A stretch of DNA of 64,000 bases, from sequence record PQ182779.1; one strand, written 5' to 3'. Position 1 is the stretch's first letter. The number at the start of each line of letters is the position of its first letter. The notes beneath the pieces are model-generated. The model ran no database searches. It was not told where the DNA came from and saw nothing but the letters and a program-made list of their open reading frames with translations. Below, piece after piece: positions 14,371 to 43,751 of the stretch. Both the position numbers and the translations under genes were made by a program.

Positions 14371-14402
14371 AGACAGAGAGAGCCCAACGGCTCTCTCTGT
14401 CT
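14371..14402. terminator. Bidirectional terminator between convergent genes
   Basis: AGACAGAGAGAGCC-CAAC-GGCTCTCTCTGTCT. Confidence 0.8.
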
Positions 14403-14417
14403 GTGTTTGTTAATAGT

Positions 14418-17129
14418 TTAACCAACGTAAATTGCTGACATAACGAGTTGCGAATAAATACCCGTAATATAAGCTTGCGCGTCACGCGTCCCTATTTGGA
14501 AGTAGTTAGCGAAAACGTTCATCGGTGTACTAGTCGTACCAGTTCCCGCCGTACCGCCTACAGTAACACTGGCGCTTCCGGATAATGTGTTTTCCGACGA
14601 TGCTGTTGAAGATGATAGTGTTCTTGAGAACCTTCCGCTACCCGGGTAGTTTAAAGTAAAAGTATCGATCAAAGTGTTTGCTCCTTGAGTAGACGCAGTC
14701 GTCACTGTATTCCCTTTCGCGATGTAAAGAGAAACGGTATTAGTACCCGCAGTTGTTGCCCCGGACCAAACCAGTAAGTTAGAAACCACACCACCAGTTG
14801 TTGCATCGAAGAAAGTACAATTCGACATCCTTGCCCATTGCGCAAGAGTAGTGTTACTCTGCGTCACCGTGGACAGAGAGTAGTTACCTACGAATGAAAC
14901 GCGTGTGGCGTTGAAACGATGGATAAAGTTCGAGTTACTGGTCACATATGGGATGTTAGACCCGGAGACAACAGATCCTCCCACCATATTCACCTCAACT
15001 CGTGTACTCGCTTCAGTTCCTCCGTCATTAGTGATTATTTGACTGAATTCACAATCGTCAAAATTGTAAACACCACGTTGACTGATCCTTAACAACGTTG
15101 GGGTAATATTGGTGTTTTTATTCCGGATCCGACGACCACTCACACGAAGATTGTGTGCGTAGCCAGTACCCGCCGCCTGGAAAACCAGGTTAGAAACGCT
15201 GATATTTTCCAAATCAATACGTATATCAACCGGTTCAATATTTGGATCAGCTGTGTTACTGACAGCTTTTGGCGAGTTAAGGAAGTTGATCATGTTAAAT
15301 TTGATCATCCCGCCATCTGCATAAGTGACATTCGCCATTCTCAGATAAGATGGATGATTCACCTGATCTGGTTTATTAGAGAATACGGGGTTAATTAAGA
15401 TGTTTGCTGTAGCAGGATCGGTAATAGTAAAGCCATCGATATCGATTTCTTTAAACGGGGAGGTACCCATAGGAGAGTTAGCAGGTAACGCAGTATATGG
15501 ATCAGCGTAACCTTGAACTATCCCCGCACGACCATCTGTTGCAGAAACATAGTTTGGCCAACGCCCATTGACTTTCACGTCTCGTATAATCAATTTACTA
15601 TCGGTAATACCACCGCTACTGGTTCTTGCTTGCAGCAAAGACGGGAAATAGATTCTGCCTTTGTAGGGTTCCCCCAAACCTTTACCTAGTTCAAATGTGA
15701 CGCGAATCAACTCTACCGTGGAGTTTTTTACTCCAAATGTTACGACTCCTGCATCACCTACGGTACAGTCAATGAGCCGATAATAACCGATAATAGGGTT
15801 ATGGGCGTCGTAGTTGTTTGACGTACAGTTAATAAACGTAGTATCTGTTATATACCCGGCAGCAGAAATAGCGCCCCAACCGTAACCAAAACAGTTCACA
15901 TTTCGTACTGTCAAGTAACAAGTCCAGGCGTGATGAAATGTATAAGATGCCGTAGTCGCAGTCATCCCAACATTACTAAAAGTTGAACTCGGGTACGCAT
16001 CGTAAAAAGAATCGGCCTCGATAAAGATCCCGTACTGAATATCTGAGACATGTCGATTACCTACGTCCGTAATCGGCTTATTAATTACTTTCCCGCCGAC
16101 AATTTTGATGTTAGTGACGTAGAAATGTTGGAACATTATCGGGAATGGTTTATTCCGATAATCTACATTGGGGTGTTTAATAGTACATTTCCGGTCGGCG
16201 ACGGGAAGAACTGTGATTTTGTTTACGGCAGTAGCATTATACGGTAACGAATGGTCCATTCTTCCGTTTGCTGAAACACGTGTTAAGTGCATATACTTTT
16301 GAACTGCAGCACCAGCAGCAGTACCGGACGTGTTGTACGTGTAGAGATCATCAGTAAATTCAATGAGAACCATTGAGCCATTCAACGTAGTATCGGCAGC
16401 TAACGAATCTAATGTATTCGATCCAGCAACTAAATCGCGCGCTGCATTTGCATTGATAGTACTCACCAAAGCCGATGTGGCATCGTAGACCACCGTCGCA
16501 TTCTTTTGGGTAAACCAAAAAGTACCCGTATAACCAGTCCCTAAAATGATAGTCGCCCCGGACAAATCAAAATCGGCATAATCAGTGTAGAATACGAGTT
16601 TGTCGTTTCCGCTGATTAAGTAAGTACCGTTATTCTGTTTTATCGATAGTTTCAATGTTGCAGCCAATAAAAAAACGGCCTTAATTTTATTGGTAACGTC
16701 CACCGTTCCTGTTTTATCGATCCCGAACATGTCGAACGAAAGATAACTTTGAAGATCACCTATAAACCCGCCGTTAGGGAGGGGTATTTTCCCTTCGGCA
16801 ATGTTACTTATAGTTGTCGCTGTCAGGTAAGTAATCTGATTGTTATTTGAATCAAGTAACGGACTGTAACTATCACCGCCTTGATTCACCCAACCTAAAA
16901 CAATTGTCTTAGTCTCATCTTCGTAAGCAAAGAAAGACTCGTTTTTCTCGGTACCGGCTAATCCCGATGCGACATCTGCGTAAGCATTCTCGAACCACAG
17001 CGCGGAACGGAGCGTGGATAGATCGATATTGTTTGTTTCCGTGTTGGAATTAACAACGGGAATCAGTGCATTTTCTTTAATGCGTGTTGCGCTATCTAGT
17101 TCGCTGATTTTAGAAGTTTCATTAGTCAT
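14418..17129 (-). CDS. Tailspike / putative capsule depolymerase A (903 aa, KISEL anchor)
   Basis: N-terminal KISEL...LRSALWFENAY anchor, then SFDMFGIDKTGTVDVT at the beta-helix start and an N/T/G/S-rich body. Confidence 0.85.
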   Translation of the reverse strand: MTNETSKISELDSATRIKENALIPVVNSNTETNNIDLSTLRSALWFENAYADVASGLAGTEKNESFFAYEDETKTIVLGWVNQGGDSYSPLLDSNNNQITYLTATTISNIAEGKIPLPNGGFIGDLQSYLSFDMFGIDKTGTVDVTNKIKAVFLLAATLKLSIKQNNGTYLISGNDKLVFYTDYADFDLSGATIILGTGYTGTFWFTQKNATVVYDATSALVSTINANAARDLVAGSNTLDSLAADTTLNGSMVLIEFTDDLYTYNTSGTAAGAAVQKYMHLTRVSANGRMDHSLPYNATAVNKITVLPVADRKCTIKHPNVDYRNKPFPIMFQHFYVTNIKIVGGKVINKPITDVGNRHVSDIQYGIFIEADSFYDAYPSSTFSNVGMTATTASYTFHHAWTCYLTVRNVNCFGYGWGAISAAGYITDTTFINCTSNNYDAHNPIIGYYRLIDCTVGDAGVVTFGVKNSTVELIRVTFELGKGLGEPYKGRIYFPSLLQARTSSGGITDSKLIIRDVKVNGRWPNYVSATDGRAGIVQGYADPYTALPANSPMGTSPFKEIDIDGFTITDPATANILINPVFSNKPDQVNHPSYLRMANVTYADGGMIKFNMINFLNSPKAVSNTADPNIEPVDIRIDLENISVSNLVFQAAGTGYAHNLRVSGRRIRNKNTNITPTLLRISQRGVYNFDDCEFSQIITNDGGTEASTRVEVNMVGGSVVSGSNIPYVTSNSNFIHRFNATRVSFVGNYSLSTVTQSNTTLAQWARMSNCTFFDATTGGVVSNLLVWSGATTAGTNTVSLYIAKGNTVTTASTQGANTLIDTFTLNYPGSGRFSRTLSSSTASSENTLSGSASVTVGGTAGTGTTSTPMNVFANYFQIGTRDAQAYITGIYSQLVMSAIYVG

Positions 17130-17151
17130 GTCTTTATTCCTGAATGGAGAC

Positions 17152-17165
17152 GGTCATACGAAACA
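17152..17165 (-). promoter_or_regulatory. Putative late promoter TGTTTCGTATGACC for tailspike A
   Basis: This 14-mer is identical to 21037-21050; the phiKZ late consensus is TATG. Confidence 0.65.
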
Positions 17166-17195
17166 AAATGAGTAGGGCAAAAGCCCTACTCATTT
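17166..17195 (-). terminator. Terminator after tailspike B
   Basis: AAATGAGTAGGGC-AAAA-GCCCTACTCATTT. Confidence 0.75.
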
Positions 17196-17204
17196 GTATT
17201 TCAA

Positions 17205-20200
17205 TTACAGCAAAATTTCCCAAGAGAATGCGCTACCATCGGAAGCATTATTACTTTTTACAGTGAATGATGTACCGTTAGCGATCGCACTGATATATAA
17301 ACTATTAACGTTAGTGGCGAAAGTTAATGGACGTAAAATGATTTGTGAATTGTATCGCATTATATTTGCGGAAGTACTCAACTGACTAAAAACTTCAGTG
17401 GTGTTAACCGTCACGGTACCTGCGGTCAGCGTAGCAACCCCTGATATTTTAGACCCATCAGTGCTATTCGCACTCAACCTATTACCACGCGTGATACACG
17501 ATAACGGCTGAACCGTAAACCCTGTCAGCGCAGCCCAGTCTCTACCGTAACCAATGACGTTACAATTTTCAATGGTCACCAACTCTGGTTTATTGGCTAT
17601 ATTCGCGTCGCCTTTGAAACGAATAATTTTATTCTGGGAACCAGAGGAAGGCATATGTACGTTCTCTATTTTCAGGTCATTATAGACAGCATTAAACCCA
17701 GCGGCCAAATCAATGGCGACAGGGTTATTGCCGGTAATGGACCCCCCAGAAATTTTACCCGAATTAATTGCAACCCCGATAAAACCATTGTTGATGATAT
17801 GGCAGTTCTCAAGGTATCCTCCTTCATACCCGAAGTTAACCCCGTAACGAGTGTTTCCCTCCGCCTTACAATCTATCAATCTGGTGTTAGTAGCCCCTAA
17901 AGCACCGCCAAATCCATCCAATGTTGCACCAAAAGCATAGCAGTTAATCAGTGTTGCATTAATCGCTCTTATCTGGAATCCATCGTCACCGGAAGAGAAA
18001 GACTGGCAGCTATCAAACGTAATACCTAAACCAAGATCATGGGTATCGAACCCAGAGAGACGTGCGTTGTGTGAAACAGAGTTTCTTATTTGGGAGAACA
18101 GCGGTCCGCCATAAAGGTCACCTGTAGCTAACCAGTTAAACGAAACGGCATGACGTGAATCTGTCGAATAAAGTTTATTGACGTCTACGTTTTCCGAACA
18201 ACCAATAATTTCAACGCCGTACCAGCCTATAGAGTCCACCGTTAAATTATCCACAGTAACATTACTGCAATTAAATAGCTTAACTGCGGATCTTCCCGCT
18301 ACATCATCGAGTGAAGATTTATCCTTAGTACCGCGGATAGTGATATTCTTGAGTGTCAAATTATAAACATACGCGCAGTTAATACCGAGCGCAAAGGTAT
18401 TCGTAAACCCGTCCTTGTTAAGGTTCGCGCCATCGATGACAATGTTTTCAAGAACTGTTGCTTTCCCCGCTTTCGCTGTATCTGAGGTATTAAAGTCGAA
18501 TAACAGACCAGTGTGGAGACGGTAGACCGTATTTGAACCAGAGGCTGTTTTTGCGGTTATCTTACGTAAGACTGATTGCTTAACCTGGTAGTTATTTGGA
18601 CCAGGAAGAAGTTTTTCAGACCGTATCTCTAACCAATCTCCAACGTTGAAAGATGAGTCGTTTAAGGTAATGGAAACATCTTTGGCTAATGCATTGACAG
18701 CGAGGTTAACAAAAGAAGTCGGGGCCGAACCTTTGATTGAAATCCCTTCTCTTGCTGTGTTATCGGCATTGATTGTTACTCCATTACCAAATGTTATTTT
18801 TGTATTACTCCCCACTGTAAGTGACGAAGTTGCCGTAATATCCCTATCAAAATTTAAAGTTTTACCACCACCGGCGATATACGCGTTGATAGCACTAACC
18901 GAGTTGAATCCGCTCGAGATAACCTTATCAGTTACCAAGACATAAGTTGCCACAACGGTCGGAGAAATAACTGTACCTGTCGTCGTCGGCGTGACTATTG
19001 GATCGGTTATCTCAACACGGTAATAGCCGCCACCTGCATAACCACTACGAAGTACAGTGGTATTTAATGCGGCCCCATCGGTACCGGCGCCAGGGATCGT
19101 TAAACGAAGTCCGGCCGTTTTAGCGCCGAGGGCACTGGACCAATTTAAACTGTTACTTTCAATGTATTTCTGACCAGCAATAGTAGCTCTGATACTATCC
19201 GTACTACTAGGTGCAATGGATCCGCTTCTAGTAATGAGATATTGTGCACCAGTTGCAGTTAAGATTATCAGGGTACCGGCAGAAAATTCCTGCCCAACGG
19301 GTATCGAAGTAACGTTGTCAATGTATTTAACTTCATTAATCGATTGGGTTAAATTCCCCCTACTGTAGCTATTCTCGGCCATTTTGATGGCGTCAAAATT
19401 GCAGTTAGTTACACTAAGATTATCAACGTACAGATTATTTACTGTCCCGATGGGCGTGTTTGATAACGAAAGAAGTTTAACATTATCTAGAATCAGGGTA
19501 ATCGATCTTAAACGCCTAAGAATCCCTACACCCTCTCCAGTGGTGTGCGATACTTGAATAGCGTGATCCGTACCCCGAGCATTAATGTTACTTAATTTGG
19601 CTGTAGTAAAGTACCCTTTGAAAGTAAAGTTTTTAGACGAGACATTTTCTACTAGAACATTACTGTCAACACTATCGTTGGCACCGTTATAAATGGTACA
19701 GTTACCAGTCGTGATGATATTACGAAGATTATAATTCCGACATGGTGAACTATATGCCCCGGAGACAACGCCCCAGCGCAAGGCCAAGCCATCTTCGGTA
19801 CCTTGAACTGGTTTAGAGACCAGGCCGTTGATGCTAAAATCTCGACAACCGTATAGAACTACTCCCGCAGCGGATAAACCTGCATTGGGTGAAAATGATG
19901 CATCCGGGTAGACAAAGTTATTTGTTATTTCAAACGCCCGTGATTTTTCAAAATGAATACATTGCCGACAATTTATTACAAGGTTATTCGTAACAATGAC
20001 ATTCGCCGCCAAATCTGCATCATCCGATTCTAATGCGTAGTTTCCAGCGCCTGCCACACCTATCCCTATTCCCCACGCCGAATTTACCCCTCTTACCCCA
20101 TCAATAAAGTTACCGTCAATTAGAACAAATCCGGGCTGATAGCTTTGAATAAGGTTAAGTTCAATAGGATCGCCTGCATTATTTTTGAATGTGTTATTTT

Positions 20201-21008
20201 GAATAGTGATGTTACTAAAAGGTTTCCCTGTTGTCCCGTCAGCCAAAATACAATAATTGTTATTTTCAAAATGACAGTTTCTTATCGTAATGGATCCAGG
20301 TAAGGGGTTATTACGTAAGGATATTGCAGTTGTAGCTGCGCTATTTATAAAATCGCAGAAAGATAAATCAACACCACCGCCATAATGGCGAACACAGACC
20401 CCTTCGAATGAAACGCCTTCTACGTTAGATTTGGAAATGTATATGTTGTTAGTTCCCGCACCTTTAATTGAGCCGCCAACAAAAACAATACCGTCCATTG
20501 TTAGTCCTTTGGACGGGTTACTTAAAACGTATGTCTTCGAACCAATTACTTTTAATTGTTTTAACTTTGCATCAACAAACAATTGATTAAGGGCATCTTC
20601 AATGTCAGAGTATGAGGGGTTGTTTATATACATTTCCGGTGTAAGATAGTTAACCCCATCCGTTACTTTTTTTACTACAGCTGAAACTCCCCTGGCGGAA
20701 GGATATTTTATTTGATTTCCTTCGGTATCAAGTATCGCGCTAAAAGTTGTTCCTCCTTGATTCATGTAACCAAGAACAGAATTCTTGTTTATATCTTCGA
20801 AAACAAAGAATGGCTCATTAGAAATCGTGTTAGCTATACCTTCCTCTATGCTATCGAAAGCATTTTCAAAATTAATACTTTGCCTCAAAGTGTTTAAGGT
20901 ACTCGCACCGGTGATGATTGAACTTTGATCAGTTAGAGGGATAAGTGTATTCTCGTTCGGTTTATTGTTTCTTGGAAGTTGAGTTATTTTTAAAGATGTA
21001 TCACTCAT
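17205..21008 (-). CDS. Tailspike B (1267 aa): colanidase/WcaM-like domain fused to a Klebsiella K1-lyase-like domain
   Basis: KITQLP...FENAF anchor. WGIGIGVAG...CRQCIHFE...YGCRDF...WGVVSGAY is WcaM-like. GRSAVKLFNC...IGWYGVEIIGCSE...RHAVSFNW...GFDTHDLG...DDGFQIR...SFTVKSNNASDGSAFSWEILL is K1-lyase-like. Confidence 0.85.
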   Translation of the reverse strand: MSDTSLKITQLPRNNKPNENTLIPLTDQSSIITGASTLNTLRQSINFENAFDSIEEGIANTISNEPFFVFEDINKNSVLGYMNQGGTTFSAILDTEGNQIKYPSARGVSAVVKKVTDGVNYLTPEMYINNPSYSDIEDALNQLFVDAKLKQLKVIGSKTYVLSNPSKGLTMDGIVFVGGSIKGAGTNNIYISKSNVEGVSFEGVCVRHYGGGVDLSFCDFINSAATTAISLRNNPLPGSITIRNCHFENNNYCILADGTTGKPFSNITIQNNTFKNNAGDPIELNLIQSYQPGFVLIDGNFIDGVRGVNSAWGIGIGVAGAGNYALESDDADLAANVIVTNNLVINCRQCIHFEKSRAFEITNNFVYPDASFSPNAGLSAAGVVLYGCRDFSINGLVSKPVQGTEDGLALRWGVVSGAYSSPCRNYNLRNIITTGNCTIYNGANDSVDSNVLVENVSSKNFTFKGYFTTAKLSNINARGTDHAIQVSHTTGEGVGILRRLRSITLILDNVKLLSLSNTPIGTVNNLYVDNLSVTNCNFDAIKMAENSYSRGNLTQSINEVKYIDNVTSIPVGQEFSAGTLIILTATGAQYLITRSGSIAPSSTDSIRATIAGQKYIESNSLNWSSALGAKTAGLRLTIPGAGTDGAALNTTVLRSGYAGGGYYRVEITDPIVTPTTTGTVISPTVVATYVLVTDKVISSGFNSVSAINAYIAGGGKTLNFDRDITATSSLTVGSNTKITFGNGVTINADNTAREGISIKGSAPTSFVNLAVNALAKDVSITLNDSSFNVGDWLEIRSEKLLPGPNNYQVKQSVLRKITAKTASGSNTVYRLHTGLLFDFNTSDTAKAGKATVLENIVIDGANLNKDGFTNTFALGINCAYVYNLTLKNITIRGTKDKSSLDDVAGRSAVKLFNCSNVTVDNLTVDSIGWYGVEIIGCSENVDVNKLYSTDSRHAVSFNWLATGDLYGGPLFSQIRNSVSHNARLSGFDTHDLGLGITFDSCQSFSSGDDGFQIRAINATLINCYAFGATLDGFGGALGATNTRLIDCKAEGNTRYGVNFGYEGGYLENCHIINNGFIGVAINSGKISGGSITGNNPVAIDLAAGFNAVYNDLKIENVHMPSSGSQNKIIRFKGDANIANKPELVTIENCNVIGYGRDWAALTGFTVQPLSCITRGNRLSANSTDGSKISGVATLTAGTVTVNTTEVFSQLSTSANIMRYNSQIILRPLTFATNVNSLYISAIANGTSFTVKSNNASDGSAFSWEILL

Positions 21009-21036
21009 GTTATTTTCTCTCTTAACATAGTCTGAT

Positions 21037-21050
21037 GGTCATACGAAACA
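21037..21050 (-). promoter_or_regulatory. Putative late promoter TGTTTCGTATGACC for tailspike B
   Basis: Identical to 17152-17165. Confidence 0.65.
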
Positions 21051-21052
21051 CA

Positions 21053-21084
21053 AAAGAGAAGCGTGGTAAACCACGCTTCTCTTT
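21053..21084 (-). terminator. Terminator after tailspike C
   Basis: AAAGAGAAGCGTGG-TAAA-CCACGCTTCTCTTT. Confidence 0.78.
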
Positions 21085-21087
21085 AAG

Positions 21088-22899
21088 TTAAATTGTGTAT
21101 TGTCTAACGTTTAAAGTCACCGTAGAGGCCGAGGTGACATTAAGCGTAAAGGTTGATCCGTCCGTTGCTAAGTTGGTTATTGAAAGAACGTAGGTTTCCG
21201 TCCCCGTTATCCCGATAGAGGCATCTCCGCGAATTGACAATATCCGGATGTTAGCATTCCCGCCTTCGCGATAGGTTATAGTATCGAGTATACATCCGGC
21301 ATGGCCACCATTGGATGTCCTAACTGTAACCTGATATGTGTTAATATCATTACTGTAAGTCGATACTGTACGCGTAGTAACGGGCATCGGTAATGGGGAT
21401 CCTGAACTAGCCCCATTATAGGCCCCGTAACTGACATAACGTTTACCGTTGACTATTTTAGTTACGCCTTCCGTAACGTTATCCTCAAAGCCGACGCAAC
21501 CAACTATTCTCAAATACGGTCGCGTTGCGCCAGAATATGGACTAGTCACAAAACCACCCAGGTCACAACCGACAGCAGTTAATCTACCGTCGTTGTTAGC
21601 ACCTCCGATTTTGAACATATACTGCGGAGAAGGTGTTGTAATAGACCCGCCAGCATCGTCAATTCCTGCGCTGGTCGTTACACCAATTAATTTTAACTGG
21701 GATGTTTCGTAGTAAATTTGCGCAGAATTAGCTGTTTCCGCTGTCCTTCCGTTACGGCGTATATTGACATTTGTTACCGTAACAGAAGAATTATTGAGCC
21801 AAATTCCATAACCGTGTGACCGGTCAATTATTTCGCCGGTTATTTGAATGGAGCTTACGCCGTAAAGATGATAACCATCCCCTTCGTTCCATTCGACTCT
21901 ACAGTTGGTAAAGTTATTAGAATTCGCGCCGGTATTTAACTGCACGCCATGACTTTTGTTAGCGTTGATAGTAAGGCCAATATGATTACCGTCGATAGTG
22001 TTATAAAGACCGATGTTGTTACCTGACATATTACAGTCTTTAAACCACGCAGAGATATACTCCCCTGACCGTCCCCCTACTTGACTAAAACGATAGAACC
22101 CGCAGTTACTCGCCCCACCACTAAGGTTGGCAGAACTCCTAGGGAACATCGGCGTTGTTCGGTTTCCGCCATCAAAGACAATCCCTTCAACGTAAAATGA
22201 ACCGTTCCAAATAATCAAATCTGTAGCAGTCGAAATTCTACGAATAACGCTCCCTTTGTTAAGGAACACATTGTCATTGGAAGCGGTGTACGGTTTACCG
22301 GATACCCCGTATAATCGTGCTCCGGCAGGCGCTTGTAAATCACCAACGAGATAATACCCTTTAACCGGAGGAACATATACTCGAGTACTATCCGCCCAAG
22401 CAGCTAAGAAAACGCTATTGAGGTTAATTTTTGGTGAACTACTATTTACATCGTCTATCTGCTCTTGCGTCATGTAGTCCCAAAGACTCACCGTCCTTTG
22501 GAATAAATTGTTTAAGGTGGATTTACCCCACTTAAGGTCAGCGGGTCCAACGTTGATAAGTTTTTCATTGAACTCCGGGGTAACTATAGAAATTTGTTTT
22601 GAATCTGAATCTACGATGGCTTCAGCTACACCGTTACGGTTATAGTACGGGTTAACCGTCAGTTTTTCAGCATCGGCGTAGACGTAGAAAATCTGATTTG
22701 GAGCAGTACCCGCCAGGCCCGCTACCGTCGTAGTGAATGCATTCTCAAAATTCAGTAATGAACGTAAATCAGAGAGCGCCATTCCTTTAGATTCTATAAC
22801 TCCATTTTCATTCTGTGCGATTAAAACCAGATCGGTATCATTCACAGGTTTCGATGGTCTATCCATTTCACTGAGTTTTACATAAATTTCGTTTGCCAT
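21088..22899 (-). CDS. Tailspike / putative capsule depolymerase C (603 aa, KLSE anchor)
   Basis: KLSEM...LRSLLNFENAF anchor and beta-helix repeats (GANSNNFTNCRVEWNEG). Confidence 0.85.
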   Translation of the reverse strand: MANEIYVKLSEMDRPSKPVNDTDLVLIAQNENGVIESKGMALSDLRSLLNFENAFTTTVAGLAGTAPNQIFYVYADAEKLTVNPYYNRNGVAEAIVDSDSKQISIVTPEFNEKLINVGPADLKWGKSTLNNLFQRTVSLWDYMTQEQIDDVNSSSPKINLNSVFLAAWADSTRVYVPPVKGYYLVGDLQAPAGARLYGVSGKPYTASNDNVFLNKGSVIRRISTATDLIIWNGSFYVEGIVFDGGNRTTPMFPRSSANLSGGASNCGFYRFSQVGGRSGEYISAWFKDCNMSGNNIGLYNTIDGNHIGLTINANKSHGVQLNTGANSNNFTNCRVEWNEGDGYHLYGVSSIQITGEIIDRSHGYGIWLNNSSVTVTNVNIRRNGRTAETANSAQIYYETSQLKLIGVTTSAGIDDAGGSITTPSPQYMFKIGGANNDGRLTAVGCDLGGFVTSPYSGATRPYLRIVGCVGFEDNVTEGVTKIVNGKRYVSYGAYNGASSGSPLPMPVTTRTVSTYSNDINTYQVTVRTSNGGHAGCILDTITYREGGNANIRILSIRGDASIGITGTETYVLSITNLATDGSTFTLNVTSASTVTLNVRQYTI

Positions 22900-22928: not shown

Positions 22929-22972
22929 ATCATACGATTAAAAATACTTAAACGTTCTTTTGTTTCGTATGA
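22929..22972. promoter_or_regulatory. Back-to-back late promoters: ATCGTATGA (minus strand, TATG 22931-22934) for C and TGTTTCGTATGA (plus strand, 22961-22972) for D
   Basis: Both motifs lie in the 98-bp divergent gap. Confidence 0.62.
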
Positions 22973-25280: not shown

Positions 25281-25318
25281 AATAGAGAGGGGCTGAAATG
25301 CCCCTCTCTATTTGTTTT
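25281..25318 (+). terminator. Terminator after tailspike D
   Basis: AATAGAGAGGGGC-TGAAAT-GCCCCTCTCTATT plus a U tract. Confidence 0.78.
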
Positions 25319-25326
25319 CCTATGAC
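25313..25326 (+). promoter_or_regulatory. Putative late promoter TGTTTTCCTATGAC for tailspike E
   Basis: TATG at 25321, right after a terminator. Confidence 0.58.
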
Positions 25327-25365
25327 TATTTTCCTCCCCCATTGCCTAAGACGAGGTTTCTTGCA

Positions 25366-28300
25366 ATGAGCAATTACAGCAAAAAGATTTCTGAATTAGT
25401 CAGTACAGGGAAAGTCCCTGAATCCGCGGTTTTACCCGTCGCGTTAGCGGGACAAACGAACGAAACCTATCGCGTTTCTCTTAACGACGTTCGTGCTAAT
25501 CTTCTGTTTGAAAACGCTTACTCGTCATTAGCGGACGGTATTTCTAATACCGTTAAAGACGAGATTTTCTACGTCTACACAGATGACTCCCGGCACTACG
25601 TAGCAGCCTTCGTTAACGTCAATGGAGCTTCTGCTACCTCTTTATACAAAAACGGTACCGCGGTCATCTACGGTACCGGAAAATTGACCGCGGGCGGTCA
25701 ATTCGGCGCTTATACTTCATACGTCTCTTACGTGTACAATAACGGCTCTGCCGTCGGCGGTGAAACTGAGATCGGGATCCCTTTCGATTGTTTCGATATA
25801 GGCGAAATGTTCCTTAACGGAAGTCATCAGATTAAAGGGACTAACTATACTTTTGATAATGAAACCAACAAAGTCAAACTAGCAGGGCCATTGACAGCAG
25901 GTGCAACTGTTGTATTATACACGCGCCCTTATCCGGGTACGCCTGTTACACCTGTAGAACCGGGTATCACTGATTATGTTAATGTTTCCTGGTTGTATAA
26001 CGACGGTGCAGCAGTAGGCGGTGAAACGACGTTAACGCCGCCGTGGTCGTTTAAGACCGTCACTGCTATCTACATTAACGGTAGCCGCCAGATCTTGAAC
26101 AAACACTTTGAGGTAGTGAACAGCACTACTATTTCGCTGGCGAAGGCACTCAGTACGAATGACATTGTCGAAGTCATTCTTGGCGGTTCCCGTGCGGAGA
26201 TTACTGTCAGTGTATCGGGTACGCCGGCGGAAGTGTTGGCAACGTTAGCACTCAGCACTGGCGCGACCAAAGTTAACACTAGTTACGGAGTAAGCCTTGA
26301 ACAGCTCGCGCAAGGGTTTTACGGTGTAGAATCATTCGCAGCATTACAAGAACGTAAGCCAGCTTTTGAAGGTGAACGCGTCCAATTGAAAGGTTATTAC
26401 TCTTCTGATACATCCGGTTCAGGTACATTCATCGGTCACCTGGGAACCGGTATCGATGACGGCGGTATTATTGCGGCAGGTCCTAATTTTTACTGGGAGC
26501 GTGTTATTCACGATAATACGGTAACAGCCGAGATGTTTGGCTGTAAGACCACCGAAACAGTTTCATCAAATTTCAACGTGTGGCCCACAGTTCGGTTTGA
26601 TAATACCGAAAGAATGCAAGCGGCTTTTGATGCAGCTATTTCCCGTAAGTTAAAGCTAACTCTGAGTACAAATACCTACTATTTTGAATCAGCGAATACG
26701 CTGAAAATATCGGGAACTATTCAGTTAGAAGGTCGCCCGGGTACTACGTTCTATTGTAACCCGTCACTTAAAGCGAATCCGAAGACCGATCCGTTTATTG
26801 TAATTAGTGGTTGCTCGCGCGGAAGAATATCCAGTATTCTTTGCATGTCTAATTCTTATCTCGGGAAAGGAATTCAGATTGACCGTAGTGTGGGCGATAA
26901 CCAAAAGATGCTGTTAGATAACGTATTCGTTGAAACTTTCCGTTGGGGCTTCTACGTTCCTGCCGCCGAGTGTCTCAATCAAGCCGAATTTCGTAGTTGC
27001 CGGGCGCAGTCTAACTATTTCGCCGGAACCTGGATCGAGTCGTTCAAAGATGGCGAGGCTTATGCCCATAGTGCCCCTGTTCATTTCATGAACATGATCA
27101 ATAATGGTAACGGCCCGACGTCTTTCGCGATGGGATCGACTTATGTGACGACGACCGGCGCGAGAATCGCGGTAATGGATGCGGCCACTGATGTTGGCGT
27201 TCAAGTCTACATGAAAGGGCTAAGTAATGTTCAGTACATTGGCGGTCAAGTATCTGGTCACGGCAGTCCCCGTAATACAGCATTGTTCGTAGCGTCTCAG
27301 TGTAACTCAGTTCAGTTGTATGGCACTGACATCGAAGATATCACAGGTTATACTACAACTGGTGTAGCAATCACCGCCGATAACGTAGCTACGATCGAAT
27401 CGACGTTTGCCAATGACCTTTCTGGTGCTGCGATCGTTATTTCTGCTGTCCCTGATTTCAGTATTGATAGCCCGCACATTTTCAATATTAAAACTCTGGC
27501 GACGGTCAAGGTAACGAACAATACGTATAACTACAACATCGGTGGATTCACTCCTGGTGCTCCATATTTGTACGATGTCTGGGACACCAATGGTGGTTCT
27601 AATTCGCGGGTTTCAGGGATCATTCATCCGCGTTTAGTTAACTCCTCTCGCGGTATTAATGGTATTGCGTTTGATAACATGGCGAATAAGTCGACGGTTA
27701 GTTCTCTAATCCATAATGAAATCACCTCGGTGAAAGGAATCGCTCCTAATACCGGGGTCAACGTGCCACATTCTACCGTGATGTGGCAGAATGGAACGAT
27801 GCAAAGTTCCACTGACCTTAACACGGGCTATCGCTTGAGTTATCTAAGTAGTCACAACCAGCCGTTGACTTCGTTGCACTTATACAACGAAGTGACTGTC
27901 TCGAATTTCGGCGCGTCAACCACCTTAGCTGCCGCATTAGACGAACTGAAGTACATCTACATCCAAGCCCCCTATGCCAACTATGGCGACGGACGTGTCA
28001 TTGTACAAGCCATCGGGGATGCGGATGCGATTCTAAATTCTAACTGGTTCTCTCCGATGCAGTTCTCGTCGTCATTCCCTCTCGGTGGTTTTGTACGTTT
28101 CGAAGTTCCTACCGGAACTAAGAAAATCCGTTATGGGATTGTCAACAGCGCAGACTATATTGGTTCGTTAAAAAGTCACTTTATGGCTAACTTCGCCTAT
28201 TCAATACGATTCTTCCTGAAGGTTTTTGCTGTCTATAATGACATTGGTCGTTATGGTCAGTACGATCCGCCGTATTCGGTTGGAATCGATAAGTTCCGAG

Positions 28301-28425
28301 TAGGGGAACCAACCTCTCAGATGTCAGCTATAGCAGATAGTACCGCAACGGACGTGGCAGGAGTTAACCTTAAGTTAAACGCGTTGTTGGCGGAACTTCG
28401 TTCTAAAAAGTACATGGGTACGTAA
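25366..28425 (+). CDS. Tailspike E with two T4 gp10-like branch modules and a K2-type capsule depolymerase body
   Basis: The likely start is ATG 25366 (RBS GAGG). KISEL anchor and two YNxGxAVGGET repeats. The body (DRSVGDN...FRWGFY...RAQSNYF...HSAPVHF...GHGSPRNT...PPYSV) matches the remembered Webervirus K2 depolymerase (RAD2/B1 type). Confidence 0.88.
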
Positions 28426-41667: not shown

Positions 41668-41708
41668 TCGTACTTTAACCGCCCCGTATAATGAGGGATG
41701 AATTGAAA

Positions 41709-43751
41709 ATGGTTGATTTAAAACAGACCCCAAAACAGATTGCCGTTGACCTGATTAACGAAGCAAACGGGACATTGTACACGACTTCGTCAATCTCGTT
41801 AGGTACACCCGCTGTTAACACCACCGTCGTTAACGGATTGAATACGACGATTAACGTCACTAACGGCTCGTCCCTGCAATCACTCGGTGTAACATTACAG
41901 TATAATCGCCTGAGCTTTAAAACGCTATTGGCCCGACCCTACTGTCAACTGGAAGACTATAACCTTTCTCGTATCGTTGATTTAATCCCGTACCTGAACG
42001 AGAAATACCAACTCGCTCTAACTACTACTGATCTTGTAGATGGCCCGTATCGCCCCGACGACATTGCCACTGGCGTCAGAAAGATCACAGTCAGTGTGGT
42101 AGATAACCACCTTGTGTATACCGGTAGCGTAACTATCTATCTCGGCAAACAAGAGGCGGTTTACCAGTATTTCAATGCGTTACAATTTACCGTAGGAAGT
42201 GACTATAACACCCTCAGCTTTTTAGGCGGTCACTGGAAACTGGCTGGGAAAGACATCGTTGACGTCAGTCGTACCCTTTCGCAACGTTCCGGATTAACTG
42301 CGCTTTATCTTTCCCCCACTGGGAAAATTATCCCGGCAATCGACTATCACCCAAACAGCAAGAACACGTTGATAGGACGTTTCCGCAACGGTCGTCTGCT
42401 GGAGACCTTAGGGGTCAACGGCGAAACGTCTTACGATGCCTCGGGTAACTTACTTCCTAAAGTACCAACATTACCGTCTCAACTTGCAGTGATCCCTGAA
42501 ACGTTAGGGTTAACAGCGTCGTTGAATGCGGGGACATTGACCTACTCTCTGGGCTTCGACGTCACCAGTAAACGTGCCGGTACAGGTACAGTGGTCTTCG
42601 TTGATGTCAAAGACGGTTCCGACACCAATGACGGTTCGACCGCAGCGACTGCGTTCAAAACCTTCCGTCGAGCGATAAACAGACTACCTGCTGCCAGGGT
42701 TATTCGCGTAAAAGGTTACGCGGATCTTTACTACGACGCTGATTCTGGCTGGACACAAACCATTCGCCAACGTACGGTCGATATTATCGGTTACGGGGAC
42801 GTTAACCCTACCTTTACCTCCACCCGTCAAAGTACTGATTGGTCAGGGTACGATGCCAACACCTGGTACAGTAAAATCAGTGACATTGCTGCCGTGGTAG
42901 ACAAAACGGTATACAGTGATGCCGGGTACGGGAGAATGACTGCTAAGACCTCGATTGCTGACTGTGCGAACACCCCGCACTCGTATTACATCGACAACAC
43001 CAATAATCGGGTCTACGTTCGATTAACCGATAGCCGCAAGCCTGACAATAACGTTTACCTGATTGCAAAAACGCTCTCAGGGTCAGTCGCCGATGCGGGT
43101 AACGTGTTCATGGAGAAATGTAATTTTGATCTCTCCTACAATGGCTTTATCGCGGACATGACCACACCGAGAACTTACGGGTATCTGTACATGAACGCCT
43201 GTCGGTTCGGGTGGACGTTCAAGGGCCCATCCTTCGGAAGCTACGGTTACAACGTTGCACACCAAGACTGTATTGCACAATTTGGTTTCAGTGGCGGATT
43301 CAGTTACAACAGTGACCGTGTATTACCTGCGATGAACAGTAAGTATTGGATCGTGGAGAATAGAGCAACAGTCAGTTACTGCGGCTTTGATAGTAACCAT
43401 ACCTCTGCGGCTTCCGGTCTCTCTGCGTACGGAACAATTCTGCGTCTGAACTCCGTATACAGCCATTGTGACGGTTCTCACGTCAAAGACTCCGGTGAAG
43501 GAACGTTCTCAGTGAATATCGCTTGCCAGTCCAATAACGTGACGAACACGTTGAGTAATCTGGCGCACTTTACCACCGGTGCGAATGCGACGACCGTTGC
43601 ATCTGCTCAGTACTGGAGTTGTAAAGGGGATAACTCGGCGTTCTCGTTCATTCCAAACGGAGTAGGGAAAATCGCCCTGTTCGATACCGACATTGGCACT
43701 AAACCGGCCACGCAGCTTCTGACCCCGTATCAATTCATTTATACCGCTTAA
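41709..43751 (+). CDS. Baseplate-anchored tail fibre/structural protein with a pectin-lyase-like C-terminal part
   Basis: N-terminal YNRL...DLIPYLNEKYQLAL domain, then VFVDVKDGSDTNDGS...FKTFRRAI (DUF1565-like). The start is 41709 or 41691. Confidence 0.75.
   Translation: MVDLKQTPKQIAVDLINEANGTLYTTSSISLGTPAVNTTVVNGLNTTINVTNGSSLQSLGVTLQYNRLSFKTLLARPYCQLEDYNLSRIVDLIPYLNEKYQLALTTTDLVDGPYRPDDIATGVRKITVSVVDNHLVYTGSVTIYLGKQEAVYQYFNALQFTVGSDYNTLSFLGGHWKLAGKDIVDVSRTLSQRSGLTALYLSPTGKIIPAIDYHPNSKNTLIGRFRNGRLLETLGVNGETSYDASGNLLPKVPTLPSQLAVIPETLGLTASLNAGTLTYSLGFDVTSKRAGTGTVVFVDVKDGSDTNDGSTAATAFKTFRRAINRLPAARVIRVKGYADLYYDADSGWTQTIRQRTVDIIGYGDVNPTFTSTRQSTDWSGYDANTWYSKISDIAAVVDKTVYSDAGYGRMTAKTSIADCANTPHSYYIDNTNNRVYVRLTDSRKPDNNVYLIAKTLSGSVADAGNVFMEKCNFDLSYNGFIADMTTPRTYGYLYMNACRFGWTFKGPSFGSYGYNVAHQDCIAQFGFSGGFSYNSDRVLPAMNSKYWIVENRATVSYCGFDSNHTSAASGLSAYGTILRLNSVYSHCDGSHVKDSGEGTFSVNIACQSNNVTNTLSNLAHFTTGANATTVASAQYWSCKGDNSAFSFIPNGVGKIALFDTDIGTKPATQLLTPYQFIYTA

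What the first reader, a model, noticed from the sequence alone, without database searches (positions are those of the whole stretch)
17205..21008. One tailspike appears to fuse two complete depolymerases: colanidase (WcaM-like) plus K1 capsule lyase
Seen in sequence: after the ~110-aa KITQL/FENAF anchor there are two beta-helix bodies in series, joined at ...TVVATY|VLVTDKVISSGFNS (about nt 18940, aa ~690). The first body has WGIGIGVAG...CRQCIHFE...YGCRDF...WGVVSGAYSSPCRNY. It ends in IRATIAGQKYIESN...YRVEITDPIVTPT, which I recall as the natural C-terminus of phage colanic-acid-degrading spikes (phi92 gp150 type, WcaM family). The second body follows the remembered K1 lyase of NTUH-K2044-K1-1 (K1-ORF34) from SAPTSFV and RSEKLLPGPNNY through GRSAVK, IGWYGVE, RHAVSFNW, GFDTHD and DDGFQ to its native C-terminus (SNNASD...SWEILL). 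Established: tailspikes normally carry one catalytic beta-helix per chain. Inference: this is a natural bifunctional trimer that cuts both a colanic-acid-like exopolysaccharide and the K1 capsule. It would be an evolutionary domain-stacking route and a ready-made scaffold for engineering dual depolymerases.
Basis: partly seen in the sequence, partly recalled or inferred. Interest (0 to 1): 0.78.

Follow-up and report, generated by a model that had tools for sequence, protein, structure and literature searches.

The report
Two capsule enzymes in one tailspike
A giant Klebsiella phage encodes one 1,267-residue tail spike that joins a complete colanic-acid-type sugar-cutting enzyme end to end with a complete K1-capsule lyase, an arrangement found only once more among the billions of proteins searched.

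Summary
ORF 17205-21008 (minus strand) is intact and 1267 aa long. The window is 100% identical to Klebsiella phage vB_kp_MJ359, a phiKp24-like jumbo phage.

- **First 690 residues:** a shared ~110-aa anchor plus a colanidase/WcaM-type body (Phi92 gp150, E 1e-75). They align with a stand-alone 705-aa spike to within two residues of its stop.
- **Residues 691-1267:** a K1-lyase-type body that runs to the family's native C-terminus (7w1c E 3e-87; phiK64-1 S2-4 E 9e-115).
- **Junction:** there is no linker. On the lyase side it falls at the N-domain/central-domain boundary of the crystal structure.
- **Active sites:** the proven lyase residues (Tyr311/His373/Arg397) are present as Y930/H990/R1014. 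The first body keeps all 35 columns that are at least 85% conserved in its family.
- **Structure:** an AlphaFold2 model (pLDDT 94) shows two folded bodies.
- **Distribution:** no other protein among 1.84 billion representatives or 50,697 phage genomes carries both bodies. One metagenomic protein (P0001) joins a different complete depolymerase body to the same lyase body at the same lyase residue.

Dual activity and the substrates are inferred, not shown. Rating: a new variant of known kinds.

The parts
17205..21008 (-). Whole tailspike gene, 1267 codons plus stop. One uninterrupted reading frame.
   Evidence: 100% identical to kpMJ359_226 of PQ182779.1.
20679..21008 (-). N-terminal anchor, aa 1-110. 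It is paralogous to the anchors of the sibling spikes and presumably docks the spike on the branched fibre complex.
   Evidence: 30-36% identical to the first ~100-180 aa of the window's 903-, 912-, 760-, 603- and 1037-aa spikes. 45% identical to a phiKp24 spike, YP_010298949.
18939..20678 (-). Body 1, aa 111-690: colanidase/WcaM-type right-handed beta-helix plus its own C-terminal domain (about aa 540-690).
   Evidence: gp150 6e0v E 1e-75. PHROG 6117. 51% identical to the stand-alone P0002 to within 2 aa of its stop. Foldseek: 6e0v TM 0.69, and the KB57 model TM 0.83 with rmsd 2.4.
20154..20174 (-). aa 279-285 of body 1. Holds the family-invariant D280, E283 and N285, which are candidate catalytic or substrate residues.
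   Evidence: D280 34/34, E283 32/34 and N285 34/34 in stand-alone family representatives.
19947..19967 (-). aa 348-354 of body 1. Holds the invariant R348, Q349, H352 and E354.
   Evidence: 31-34 of 34 representatives.
18936..18941 (-). Junction codons, aa 690|691. There is no linker, stop, hairpin or start signal.
   Evidence: No terminator-like site here. Model pLDDT about 81 at aa 690-699.
17208..18938 (-). Body 2, aa 691-1267: K1-lyase-type beta-helix with rider and C-terminal domains, running to the family's native C-terminus.
   Evidence: 7w1c E 3e-87 and 9k4a E 9e-115. Foldseek 7w1c TM 0.87, rmsd 2.9 A. 58% identical to P0003 and 84-86% to P0001.
18456..18713 (-). Rider domain, aa 766-851.
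   Evidence: Pfam PF24149, E 4.4e-25.
17967..18221 (-). Stretch holding the lyase catalytic residues Y930, H990 and R1014, which correspond to Tyr311, His373 and Arg397 of K1-ORF34.
   Evidence: Alignments. Each is 52/52 in family representatives. Mutagenesis is reported in PMC8822698.
17211..17447 (-). K1-lyase C-terminal domain, aa 1188-1266.
   Evidence: Pfam PF24146, E 1.1e-16.
21053..21084 (-). Terminator-like hairpin (14-bp stem) between the upstream 603-aa spike gene and this gene.
21037..21049 (-). Conserved 13-mer 29 nt before the start codon. A candidate promoter or 5'-UTR element shared with the next spike gene.
17166..17195 (-). Terminator-like hairpin (13-bp stem) directly after the stop codon.

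Best explanation
The gene encodes one tailspike chain with three parts in series. First comes a ~110-aa anchor of the type shared by the phage's other spikes. Second is a complete colanidase/WcaM-type glycoside-hydrolase body, including its own C-terminal domain. Third, joined without a linker, is a complete K1-lyase-type body.

Shown here:
- The frame is intact.
- Both bodies are complete to their families' natural ends.
- Both fold confidently.
- Both keep every strongly conserved family residue, including the experimentally proven lyase triad.

Inferred:
- The chain trimerises like its two parents into one long spike. The lyase would be the distal body and the hydrolase the proximal one.
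- In the solved K1 lyase (PMC8822698), and in tailspikes generally, the active site lies in a groove on the side of the beta-helix. Stacking therefore need not block either site.
- The distal body would cut K1 capsule by beta-elimination.
- The proximal body would hydrolyse a fucose-containing, colanic-acid-like polysaccharide. Its relatives cut the beta-Glc-(1->4)-alpha-Fuc linkage, and a KL108-like Klebsiella capsule is the most plausible target.
- The benefit is that a single docking slot on the hyperbranched fibre carries two capsule specificities.
- The architecture arose by recombination at domain boundaries. The lyase's own N-terminal domain was replaced by a whole spike.
For: - **Intact ORF:**
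- **Body 1:** gp150 E 1e-75 through residue 624 of 626. The stand-alone P0002 ends 2 aa after aa 690.
- **Body 2:** matches 7w1c, 9k4a and P0003 to their last residues.
- **Lyase-side boundary:** aa 698 corresponds to K1-ORF34 residue 73, just after the N-terminal domain Glu10-Pro70 of the crystal structure (PMC8822698).
- **Lyase residues:** Y930/H990/R1014 are conserved and 52/52 in the family. Of the 10 residues that hydrogen-bond the K1 trisaccharide in the catalytic groove, 8 are identical, as are Gly286 and Arg287 of the pyruvyl pocket (roles).
- **Conserved columns:** body 1 keeps 35/35 columns conserved at >=85% in 34 stand-alone representatives, which themselves keep 94% on average. 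Body 2 keeps 28/30.
- **Selection:** dN/dS is 0.05 for the lyase body against P0001. dS is about 2, near saturation, so the ratio is rough.
- **Model:** AF2 mean pLDDT 94.3. The only dip between the bodies is at aa 690-699.
- **Fold matches:** Foldseek recovers both solved parents.
- **Gene boundaries:** terminator-like hairpins flank the gene and none lies inside at the junction.
- **Second example:** P0001 joins a different complete body to the same lyase body from the equivalent lyase residue. Its aa 184-677 match a Webervirus spike at aa 304-801 of 808.
- **Relatives' chemistry:** gp150 hydrolyses the Glc-Fuc beta-1,4 bond of colanic acid (PMC13450770). [quoted passage not shown]
Against: - No activity, trimer or virion data exist for this protein.
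- Only a monomer was modelled. pTM is 0.60, so the relative position of the two bodies is undefined.
- Body 1 is only 31-40% identical to characterised colanidases, and its catalytic residues are not defined in any source I could read. 'Active' rests on conservation alone.
- The lyase body is 37% identical to K1-ORF34 and 42% to S2-4. It lacks Arg472 of the second carbohydrate site (Ser1090) and Glu285 (Ala904), so K1 specificity is likely but not certain.
- The exact protein occurs in no other data set. The sequence therefore rests on a single genome record.
Confidence: 0.62

Rival explanations
1. Only the distal K1-lyase body works as an enzyme. The colanidase-type body has become a rigid stalk or a non-catalytic binding or branching module that merely holds the lyase further out.
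For: [quoted passage not shown] No activity data exist for body 1. Its catalytic residues are undefined (the DepoCatalog table leaves them blank).
Against: Body 1 keeps 35/35 strongly conserved family columns, more than the average stand-alone member at 94%. These include every invariant acidic or histidine residue. A spacer freed from catalytic constraint should have lost some of them.
Confidence: 0.2
2. Both bodies act on the same K1 capsule at different bonds. The lyase would cut Glc-(1->4)-GlcA. The colanidase-type hydrolase would act on the GlcA-(1->4)-Fuc bond, which resembles the Glc-(1->4)-Fuc bond cut by its relatives.
For: K1 capsule is a Glc / pyruvylated GlcA / O-acetyl-Fuc trisaccharide with a beta-(1->4) link to alpha-L-Fuc (PMC8822698). 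gp150 and Dep108 cut beta-Glc-(1->4)-alpha-Fuc.
Against: This rests purely on chemical analogy. No colanidase-family member is reported as active on K1. P0001 pairs the same lyase with an unrelated first body, which argues for independent specificities.
Confidence: 0.1
3. The fusion is an assembly or annotation artefact. The phage would really have two neighbouring spike genes.
For: The exact protein is found in no other data set. The window and the only matching record are the same sequence.
Against: - The join is in frame and lies exactly at domain boundaries on both sides.
- No repeat that could collapse an assembly was noted in the junction stretch I read; no repeat search was run.
- The lyase half has no anchor of its own, which a separate gene would need.
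- Hairpins flank the gene but none lies within it at the junction.
- An independent assembly (Logan ERR7015321) carries a second double-body gene with the same lyase-side boundary.
Confidence: 0.04
4. The chain is cleaved after assembly at the junction, giving two separate proteins.
For: Some phage spikes and fibres self-cleave a C-terminal chaperone. A Peptidase_S74 domain is present in the window's 912-aa spike.
Against: No S74 or other protease domain is found in this protein. A released lyase body would have no anchor.
Confidence: 0.04

Closest known systems
Phi92 gp150 colanidase tailspike (PDB 6e0v/6e0w) and the 'colanic acid degradation' phage family (PHROG 6117; Pfam WcaM PF27800). The family includes Klebsiella Dep108.1/.2 (KL108) and KP24gp307 (KL114).
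   Same: Body 1 aligns over the whole gp150 body to its last residues, has the same fold and keeps all family-conserved residues.
   Different: Identity is only about 31-40%, so the substrate is unknown. In all 34 stand-alone representatives the chain ends after this body; here it continues for 577 more residues. KP24gp307 itself is distant, at 25% over the N-terminal 290 aa.
K1 capsule lyase K1-ORF34 of phage NTUH-K2044-K1-1 (PDB 7w1c) and depolymerase S2-4 of phiK64-1 (PDB 9k4a)
   Same: Beta-helix with rider domain and C-terminal domain. The catalytic Tyr/His/Arg and most groove residues are identical.
   Different: Identity is 37% and 42%. The lyase's own N-terminal domain (Glu10-Pro70), or the ~360-aa N-terminal part of S2-4, is replaced by a whole second spike. 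The second-site Arg472 is Ser.
P0001, a 1254-aa protein from a Logan assembly of run ERR7015321 (locus L002)
   Same: This is the only other double-body spike found: a related anchor, a complete depolymerase body, then a K1-lyase body that is 84-86% identical and starts at the equivalent residue (678 = 691).
   Different: Its first body is unrelated. It is 46% identical to KP24gp309, which is KL158-active, and 49% identical to a Webervirus spike through residue 801 of 808. Nucleotide identity of the lyase parts is only 76.5%.
Branched multi-spike systems (KP32 two-RBP system; phiK64-1; hyperbranched phiKp24 with 14 fibres)
   Same: Same outcome: several capsule specificities on one virion. The anchor family is that of phiKp24-like spikes.
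   Different: In those systems each specificity sits on its own chain with its own docking site (PMC8262889, PMC9700779, PMC13385381). Here two sit in series on one chain.
Cellular two-beta-helix enzymes such as PL6 alginate lyases (PDB 7dmk, 8bwk)
   Same: Foldseek aligns them with this model over more than 1100 columns, so they appear to span both bodies.
   Different: The fold match is poor (TM 0.12-0.23). They are not phage spikes.

Membership tests
K1 capsule lyase family (K1-ORF34 / S2-4; PDB 7w1c, 9k4a) | Rider domain inserted in the beta-helix (Pfam PF24149) | tested here: met
   aa 766-851, E 4.4e-25, 88 bits against a cut-off of 27.
K1 capsule lyase family (K1-ORF34 / S2-4; PDB 7w1c, 9k4a) | K1-lyase C-terminal domain at the end of the chain (PF24146) | tested here: met
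   aa 1188-1266, E 1.1e-16. Alignments reach the last residue of 7w1c, S2-4 and P0003.
K1 capsule lyase family (K1-ORF34 / S2-4; PDB 7w1c, 9k4a) | Fold superposes on the solved lyase | tested here: met
   Foldseek 7w1c_D: E 6e-48, target TM 0.87, rmsd 2.9 A over 606 columns. 9k4a TM 0.80.
K1 capsule lyase family (K1-ORF34 / S2-4; PDB 7w1c, 9k4a) | Catalytic Tyr311, His373 and Arg397 (mutagenesis in PMC8822698) | tested here: met
   Y930, H990 and R1014. Each is 52/52 in family representatives.
K1 capsule lyase family (K1-ORF34 / S2-4; PDB 7w1c, 9k4a) | Residues that bind the K1 trisaccharide in the catalytic groove (the specificity determinants) | tested here: inconclusive
   8 of the 10 direct hydrogen-bond residues are identical. 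Gln130 is Glu and Glu285 is Ala. Pyruvyl-pocket Gly286 and Arg287 are kept. This fits K1 specificity but does not prove it.
K1 capsule lyase family (K1-ORF34 / S2-4; PDB 7w1c, 9k4a) | Second, non-catalytic carbohydrate site with Arg472 | tested here: not met
   Arg472 is Ser1090 and Arg378 is Gly995. This column is variable in the family, with Arg in 19 of 52.
K1 capsule lyase family (K1-ORF34 / S2-4; PDB 7w1c, 9k4a) | Own N-terminal trimerisation/attachment domain (Glu10-Pro70 in K1-ORF34) | tested here: not met
   Homology begins at K1-ORF34 residue 73, which corresponds to aa 698. The preceding 690 aa are a different spike.
K1 capsule lyase family (K1-ORF34 / S2-4; PDB 7w1c, 9k4a) | Beta-eliminative cleavage of K1 capsule | not testable with these tools
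   No biochemical data are available.
Colanidase / WcaM-type tailspikes (Phi92 gp150; PHROG 6117; Pfam PF27800) | Sequence match over the whole body, including the C-terminal domain | tested here: met
   gp150 residues 53-624 of 626, E 1.6e-75. PHROG 6117 positions 131-707 of 711, E 1.6e-160. The stand-alone homologues carry PF27800, named WcaM.
Colanidase / WcaM-type tailspikes (Phi92 gp150; PHROG 6117; Pfam PF27800) | Fold superposes on gp150 or close family models | tested here: met
   6e0v: E 3.8e-34, target TM 0.69. BFVD model of the KB57 protein: TM 0.83, rmsd 2.4 A.
Colanidase / WcaM-type tailspikes (Phi92 gp150; PHROG 6117; Pfam PF27800) | Family-invariant residues retained | tested here: met
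   35/35 columns conserved at >=85%, including D280, E283, N285, R348, Q349, H352, E354 and W623.
Colanidase / WcaM-type tailspikes (Phi92 gp150; PHROG 6117; Pfam PF27800) | Hydrolysis of the beta-Glc-(1->4)-alpha-Fuc bond of colanic acid or KL108-type capsule | not testable with these tools
   This activity is known for gp150 and Dep108 only. Identity to them is 31-35%.
Colanidase / WcaM-type tailspikes (Phi92 gp150; PHROG 6117; Pfam PF27800) | Chain ends after the body's C-terminal domain | tested here: not met
   All colanidase-type hits among the best 150 are single-body. Here 577 more residues follow.
phiKp24-type (Maaswegvirus/Siatvirus-like) spike set | Shared ~100-aa N-terminal anchor, with the gene lying in the spike cluster | tested here: met
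   Anchor similarity to five sibling spikes and to spikes of phiKp24, KpLz-2_45 and LPKP23. Synteny is shown.
phiKp24-type (Maaswegvirus/Siatvirus-like) spike set | One enzymatic beta-helix per chain, as drawn for the 14 phiKp24 fibres | tested here: not met
   Two bodies are present. The papers read describe a single beta-helix module per fibre.

The most novel reading that the evidence does not exclude
The K1-lyase body is a portable add-on. phiKp24-like phages append it seamlessly, always at the same lyase residue, to the C-terminus of spikes that are already complete. One docking slot then carries two capsule specificities. On this reading, stacking of whole depolymerase bodies is a natural and so far undescribed route by which receptor-binding proteins gain range, alongside module swapping and branching.
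Probability: 0.45. Interest if true: 0.75.

Novelty: new variant of a known kind. Interest (0 to 1): 0.62.

Why it matters
Phage capsule depolymerases are described as one anchor plus one enzymatic body. Multi-capsule phages are thought to add specificities by adding chains and docking sites. This gene and one metagenomic relative show a third natural solution: two complete enzymatic bodies in series on one chain, joined exactly at domain boundaries.

If the trimer forms as inferred, three consequences follow.
- It would show how two unrelated trimeric beta-helices can share one axis.
- Counting spike genes would undercount a phage's capsule repertoire.
- Annotation pipelines can miss a K1-specific enzyme. 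The public record names only the colanidase half.

It also marks the boundary after the K1 lyase's N-terminal domain as a natural recombination joint.

Tried and rejected
- **Junction peptide scan:** a degenerate DNA pattern for the junction peptide found 0 matches in IMG/VR.
- **Related loci:** The search for related loci with the lyase half found no confirmed relative in viral contigs or in JGI metagenome contigs.
- **Exact look-ups:** the 1267-aa protein is absent from the 15-billion-protein collection and from the contig index.
- **Word-indexed protein searches:** these scored only 8000 candidates each and returned 3-6 hits. The exhaustive HMMER search was the informative one.
- **Long hits:** eight proteins of 878-1511 aa were checked for a second body. 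Pfam showed only anchors or extensions.
- **P0001's first body:** a profile search against PDB matched only the ~100-aa pre-body module. Completeness was shown instead by alignment to a Webervirus spike.
- **Literature:** phrase searches for two-beta-helix, tandem or bifunctional tailspikes found nothing relevant. No paper on MJ359 is held. DepoCatalog, the 2024 depolymerase review, the phiKp24 paper and SpikeHunter do not mention such spikes.
- **Internal start for the lyase half:** rejected. I saw no plausible ATG or Shine-Dalgarno-like sequence in the junction DNA, and there is no promoter- or terminator-like site there.
- **Second structure job:** not used.
- **Trimer modelling:** not available.

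Full report
**What is there.** The window holds an unbroken ORF at 17205..21008 on the minus strand. It starts with ATG and encodes 1267 aa. The DNA is 100% identical to gene kpMJ359_226 of Klebsiella phage vB_kp_MJ359 (PQ182779.1, 300.8 kb). That record annotates the gene only as 'colanic acid degradation protein / colonidase tail spike'. The phage belongs to the phiKp24 (FBKp24) / KpLz-2_45 / LPKP23 group of ~300-kb jumbo phages. The gene lies in their cluster of a dozen spike genes. GC content is even across the gene.

**Two bodies, both complete.** A sequence search of the PDB returns three hits that split the protein cleanly.
- aa 121-693 match Phi92 gp150 (6e0v) residues 53-624 of 626, E 1.6e-75.
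- aa 678-1267 match K1 lyase 7w1c residues 73-671 of 671, E 3e-87.
- aa 658-1266 match 9k4a (E 9e-115), the cryo-EM structure of phiK64-1 depolymerase S2-4.

Other libraries agree. Pfam finds K1-lyase_Rider (766-851) and K1-lyase_C (1188-1266), plus a generic Beta_helix hit at 184-366. PHROGs assigns the first half to 'colanic acid degradation' (E 1.6e-160) and the second to a tail fibre family (E 1.1e-137).

Stand-alone relatives fix the boundary.
- P0002 (705 aa, from a 144-kb phage contig) is 51% identical over aa 6-690. It stops two residues after the position equal to aa 690.
- P0003 (712 aa, from ~250-kb phages KPN8 and phiKp_32) is 58% identical from its residue 136 to its end with aa 691-1267.

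The first 690 residues are therefore an entire spike: anchor, beta-helix and C-terminal domain. The lyase body follows with no linker. On the lyase side, aa 698 corresponds to K1-ORF34 residue 73. This is just past the N-terminal domain Glu10-Pro70 defined in the crystal structure (PMC8822698). A whole spike has replaced the lyase's own N-terminal domain.

**Fold.** I modelled aa 100-1267 with AlphaFold2, using 86 homologues that each align with the correct half. Mean pLDDT is 94.3. Between the bodies, the only dip is at aa 690-699, at about 81. pTM is 0.60, as expected when the relative position of two bodies is not fixed in a monomer.

Foldseek against the PDB returns the following.
- K1 lyase 7w1c: target TM 0.87, rmsd 2.9 A.
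- S2-4, 9k4a: TM 0.80.
- gp150, 6e0v: TM 0.69, E 3.8e-34.

Against viral models, no target covers more than half of the query (query TM <= 0.47).

**Are both bodies still enzymes?** For the lyase, the residues shown by mutagenesis to be essential are Tyr311, His373 and Arg397 (PMC8822698). They are present as Y930, H990 and R1014. Each is invariant in 52 family representatives.
- Eight of the ten residues that hydrogen-bond the K1 trisaccharide in the catalytic groove are identical.
- Gly286 and Arg287 of the pyruvyl pocket are also identical.
- Gln130 is Glu and Glu285 is Ala.
- Arg472 of the second, non-catalytic site is Ser1090, at a column that varies in the family.
- Against P0001, the lyase body has dN/dS 0.05. 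dS is near saturation, so the value is rough.

For the colanidase-type body, no catalytic residues are defined in the sources I could read. The DepoCatalog table leaves them blank. I used conservation instead. Of 35 columns at least 85% conserved in 34 stand-alone representatives, the window protein keeps all 35. Stand-alone members keep 94% on average. The kept residues include D280, E283, N285, R348, Q349, H352 and E354. Nothing suggests that the first body has decayed into a spacer.

**What might the first body cut?** Two relatives have defined chemistry.
- gp150 hydrolyses the beta-1,4 Glc-Fuc bond of colanic acid (PMC13450770 citing Xu et al. 2025).
- phiKp24 gp307, also placed in the colanidase-like class, is active on KL114. 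These data come from the DepoCatalog supplement and references.

The window's body 1 is 39.5% identical to the KB57 protein, about 34% to Dep108.1/.2 and 31-33% to the E. coli, Salmonella and Cronobacter phage proteins. A fucose-containing, colanic-acid-like Klebsiella capsule is the reasonable inference. The K type cannot be named.

**How rare is the arrangement?** An exhaustive HMMER search of 1.84 billion representative proteins with aa 100-1267 gave 243 hits. Every one of the best 150 matches one half only. The longer hits carry anchors or extensions, not a second body. By tblastn against 50,697 phage genomes, only MJ359 itself covers 80% or more of the protein.

The one exception in kind is P0001 (1254 aa), from an independent assembly of run ERR7015321.
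- Its anchor is 38% identical to the window's anchor.
- Its first body is unrelated to colanidase. aa 1-500 are 46% identical to phiKp24 gp309, which DepoCatalog lists as KL158-active. aa 184-677 are 49% identical to a Webervirus spike at aa 304-801 of 808.
- From aa 678, which corresponds to aa 691 of the window protein, it carries a K1-lyase body that is 84-86% identical.

So two different complete spikes carry the same lyase body from the same lyase residue. Nucleotide identity of the two lyase parts is only 76.5%, so they are not recent copies of each other. I cannot decide between two histories: one ancestral fusion followed by a swap of the first body, or two fusions at a favoured joint.

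**Gene context.** Terminator-like hairpins with 13-14-bp stems lie directly before and after the gene (21084-21053 and 17195-17166). None lies at the junction. I saw no start codon with a ribosome-binding site in the junction DNA. The gene therefore reads as a single unit. Relatives carry a different number of spike genes in this minus-strand slot.
- KpLz-2_45 and LPKP23: two genes.
- phiKp24: five genes.
- This window: three genes.

phiKp24 has no ortholog. Only the ~100-aa anchor is similar, at 45% or less, and gp307 matches at 25% over the N-terminal third.

**Most likely mechanism.** The steps below are inferred unless marked as shown.
1. The chain trimerises like both parents into one long spike anchored by aa 1-110.
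2. The lyase is the distal body and the hydrolase the proximal one.
3. In the K1 lyase the catalytic groove runs along the solvent-exposed side of each subunit (PMC8822698). Lateral grooves are also usual in tailspikes. Stacking should therefore leave both sites open.
4. The spike then offers two capsule specificities, K1 and a colanic-acid-like type, from one docking site on the hyperbranched fibre.

Shown: an intact frame, completeness of both bodies, confident folds and retention of catalytic and conserved residues. Not shown: the trimer, incorporation in the virion, either activity and the substrates.

**Rivals.** The rival readings, with my estimated probabilities, are as follows.
- The proximal body is only a stalk (0.2).
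- Both bodies act on K1 capsule at different bonds (0.1). K1 also has a beta-(1->4) link to alpha-L-Fuc.
- The fusion is an assembly artefact (0.04). Against this stand the in-frame join at domain boundaries, the missing anchor for the lyase half, and P0001.
- The chain is cleaved at the junction after assembly (0.04). No protease domain is present.

**Literature.** I found no description of a tailspike with two enzymatic beta-helix bodies in the papers held. The DepoCatalog of 129 Klebsiella depolymerases has five structural classes and none is stacked. The phiKp24 structure paper, the 2024 review and SpikeHunter also do not mention one. Phrase searches found nothing relevant, and no paper on MJ359 is held. 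Subscription journals are not covered, so absence from the literature is not proven.

**Verdict.** Both modules belong to known families, and the series arrangement is a new variant. Interest is moderate to high (0.62). It is a clean natural case that makes 'stacking' of depolymerases testable by structure and proteomics, but function remains inferred.

**Limits.**
- The sequence rests on a single genome record.
- Only a monomer was modelled.
- No read-level data were available.

Noticed in passing
window 14371-14402, 17152-17195, 21037-21084 (minus strand); 22963-22972 (plus strand): Each of the three minus-strand spike genes is followed by a strong hairpin (13-16-bp stem). An exact 13-mer, GTTTCGTATGACC, sits 23-29 nt before the start codons of the 1267-aa and 903-aa genes. 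Its 10-mer core also lies 26 nt before the 760-aa spike gene. Three of the four exact 10-mer hits in 64 kb are in this position, against 0.27 expected. This is a candidate phage promoter or leader element.
   Followed up: partly
window 25312-28425 (+), 1037-aa ORF: This protein carries several anchor or pre-body modules in series: aa 19-201 and 225-330 resemble the start of the 912-aa spike, and aa 339-419 resemble aa 132-214 of the 760-aa spike. It has no Pfam hit. It may be a branching hub of the fibre complex.
   Followed up: no
window 14418-22899 compared with L003, L004 and L005: The minus-strand spike slot between the conserved virion structural gene and the divergent promoter region is a variable cassette site. 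KpLz-2_45 and LPKP23 have two spike genes there, this phage has three and phiKp24 has five. The anchor type of the 603-aa gene sits on the opposite strand in KpLz-2_45 and LPKP23.
   Followed up: partly
PQ182779.1 gene kpMJ359_226 (window 17205-21008): The public annotation names only the colanidase half. The K1-lyase half, 577 aa, is not mentioned.
   Followed up: yes
L006 (NC_025418.1 ORF34), residue 256: The RefSeq K1-ORF34 translation has Ser at residue 256. The crystallised chain and the paper have Ile256 in the pyruvyl pocket. The window protein has Leu874 there.
   Followed up: partly
window protein aa 658-680 (nt 18969-19037): The last strands of body 1 carry a short G-G-Y-Y...T-D-P motif. 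It resembles the end of the ~70-aa pre-body module that precedes the beta-helix in other spikes, for example P0001 aa 169-192 and the start of the HMMER alignment to S2-4. The similarity is weak. It may be chance or a shared neck element that eases joining.
   Followed up: no
window 41691-43751 and 43768-45837 (+): Two neighbouring paralogous ORFs of 686 and 689 aa are 27% identical over ~630 aa. Their counterparts in phiKp24 are annotated 'bifunctional tail protein'.
   Followed up: no
window 17655-17900 and 18646-18945 (+): Two mechanical ORFs of 81 and 99 aa lie antisense inside the spike gene. I found no evidence that they are genes.
   Followed up: no
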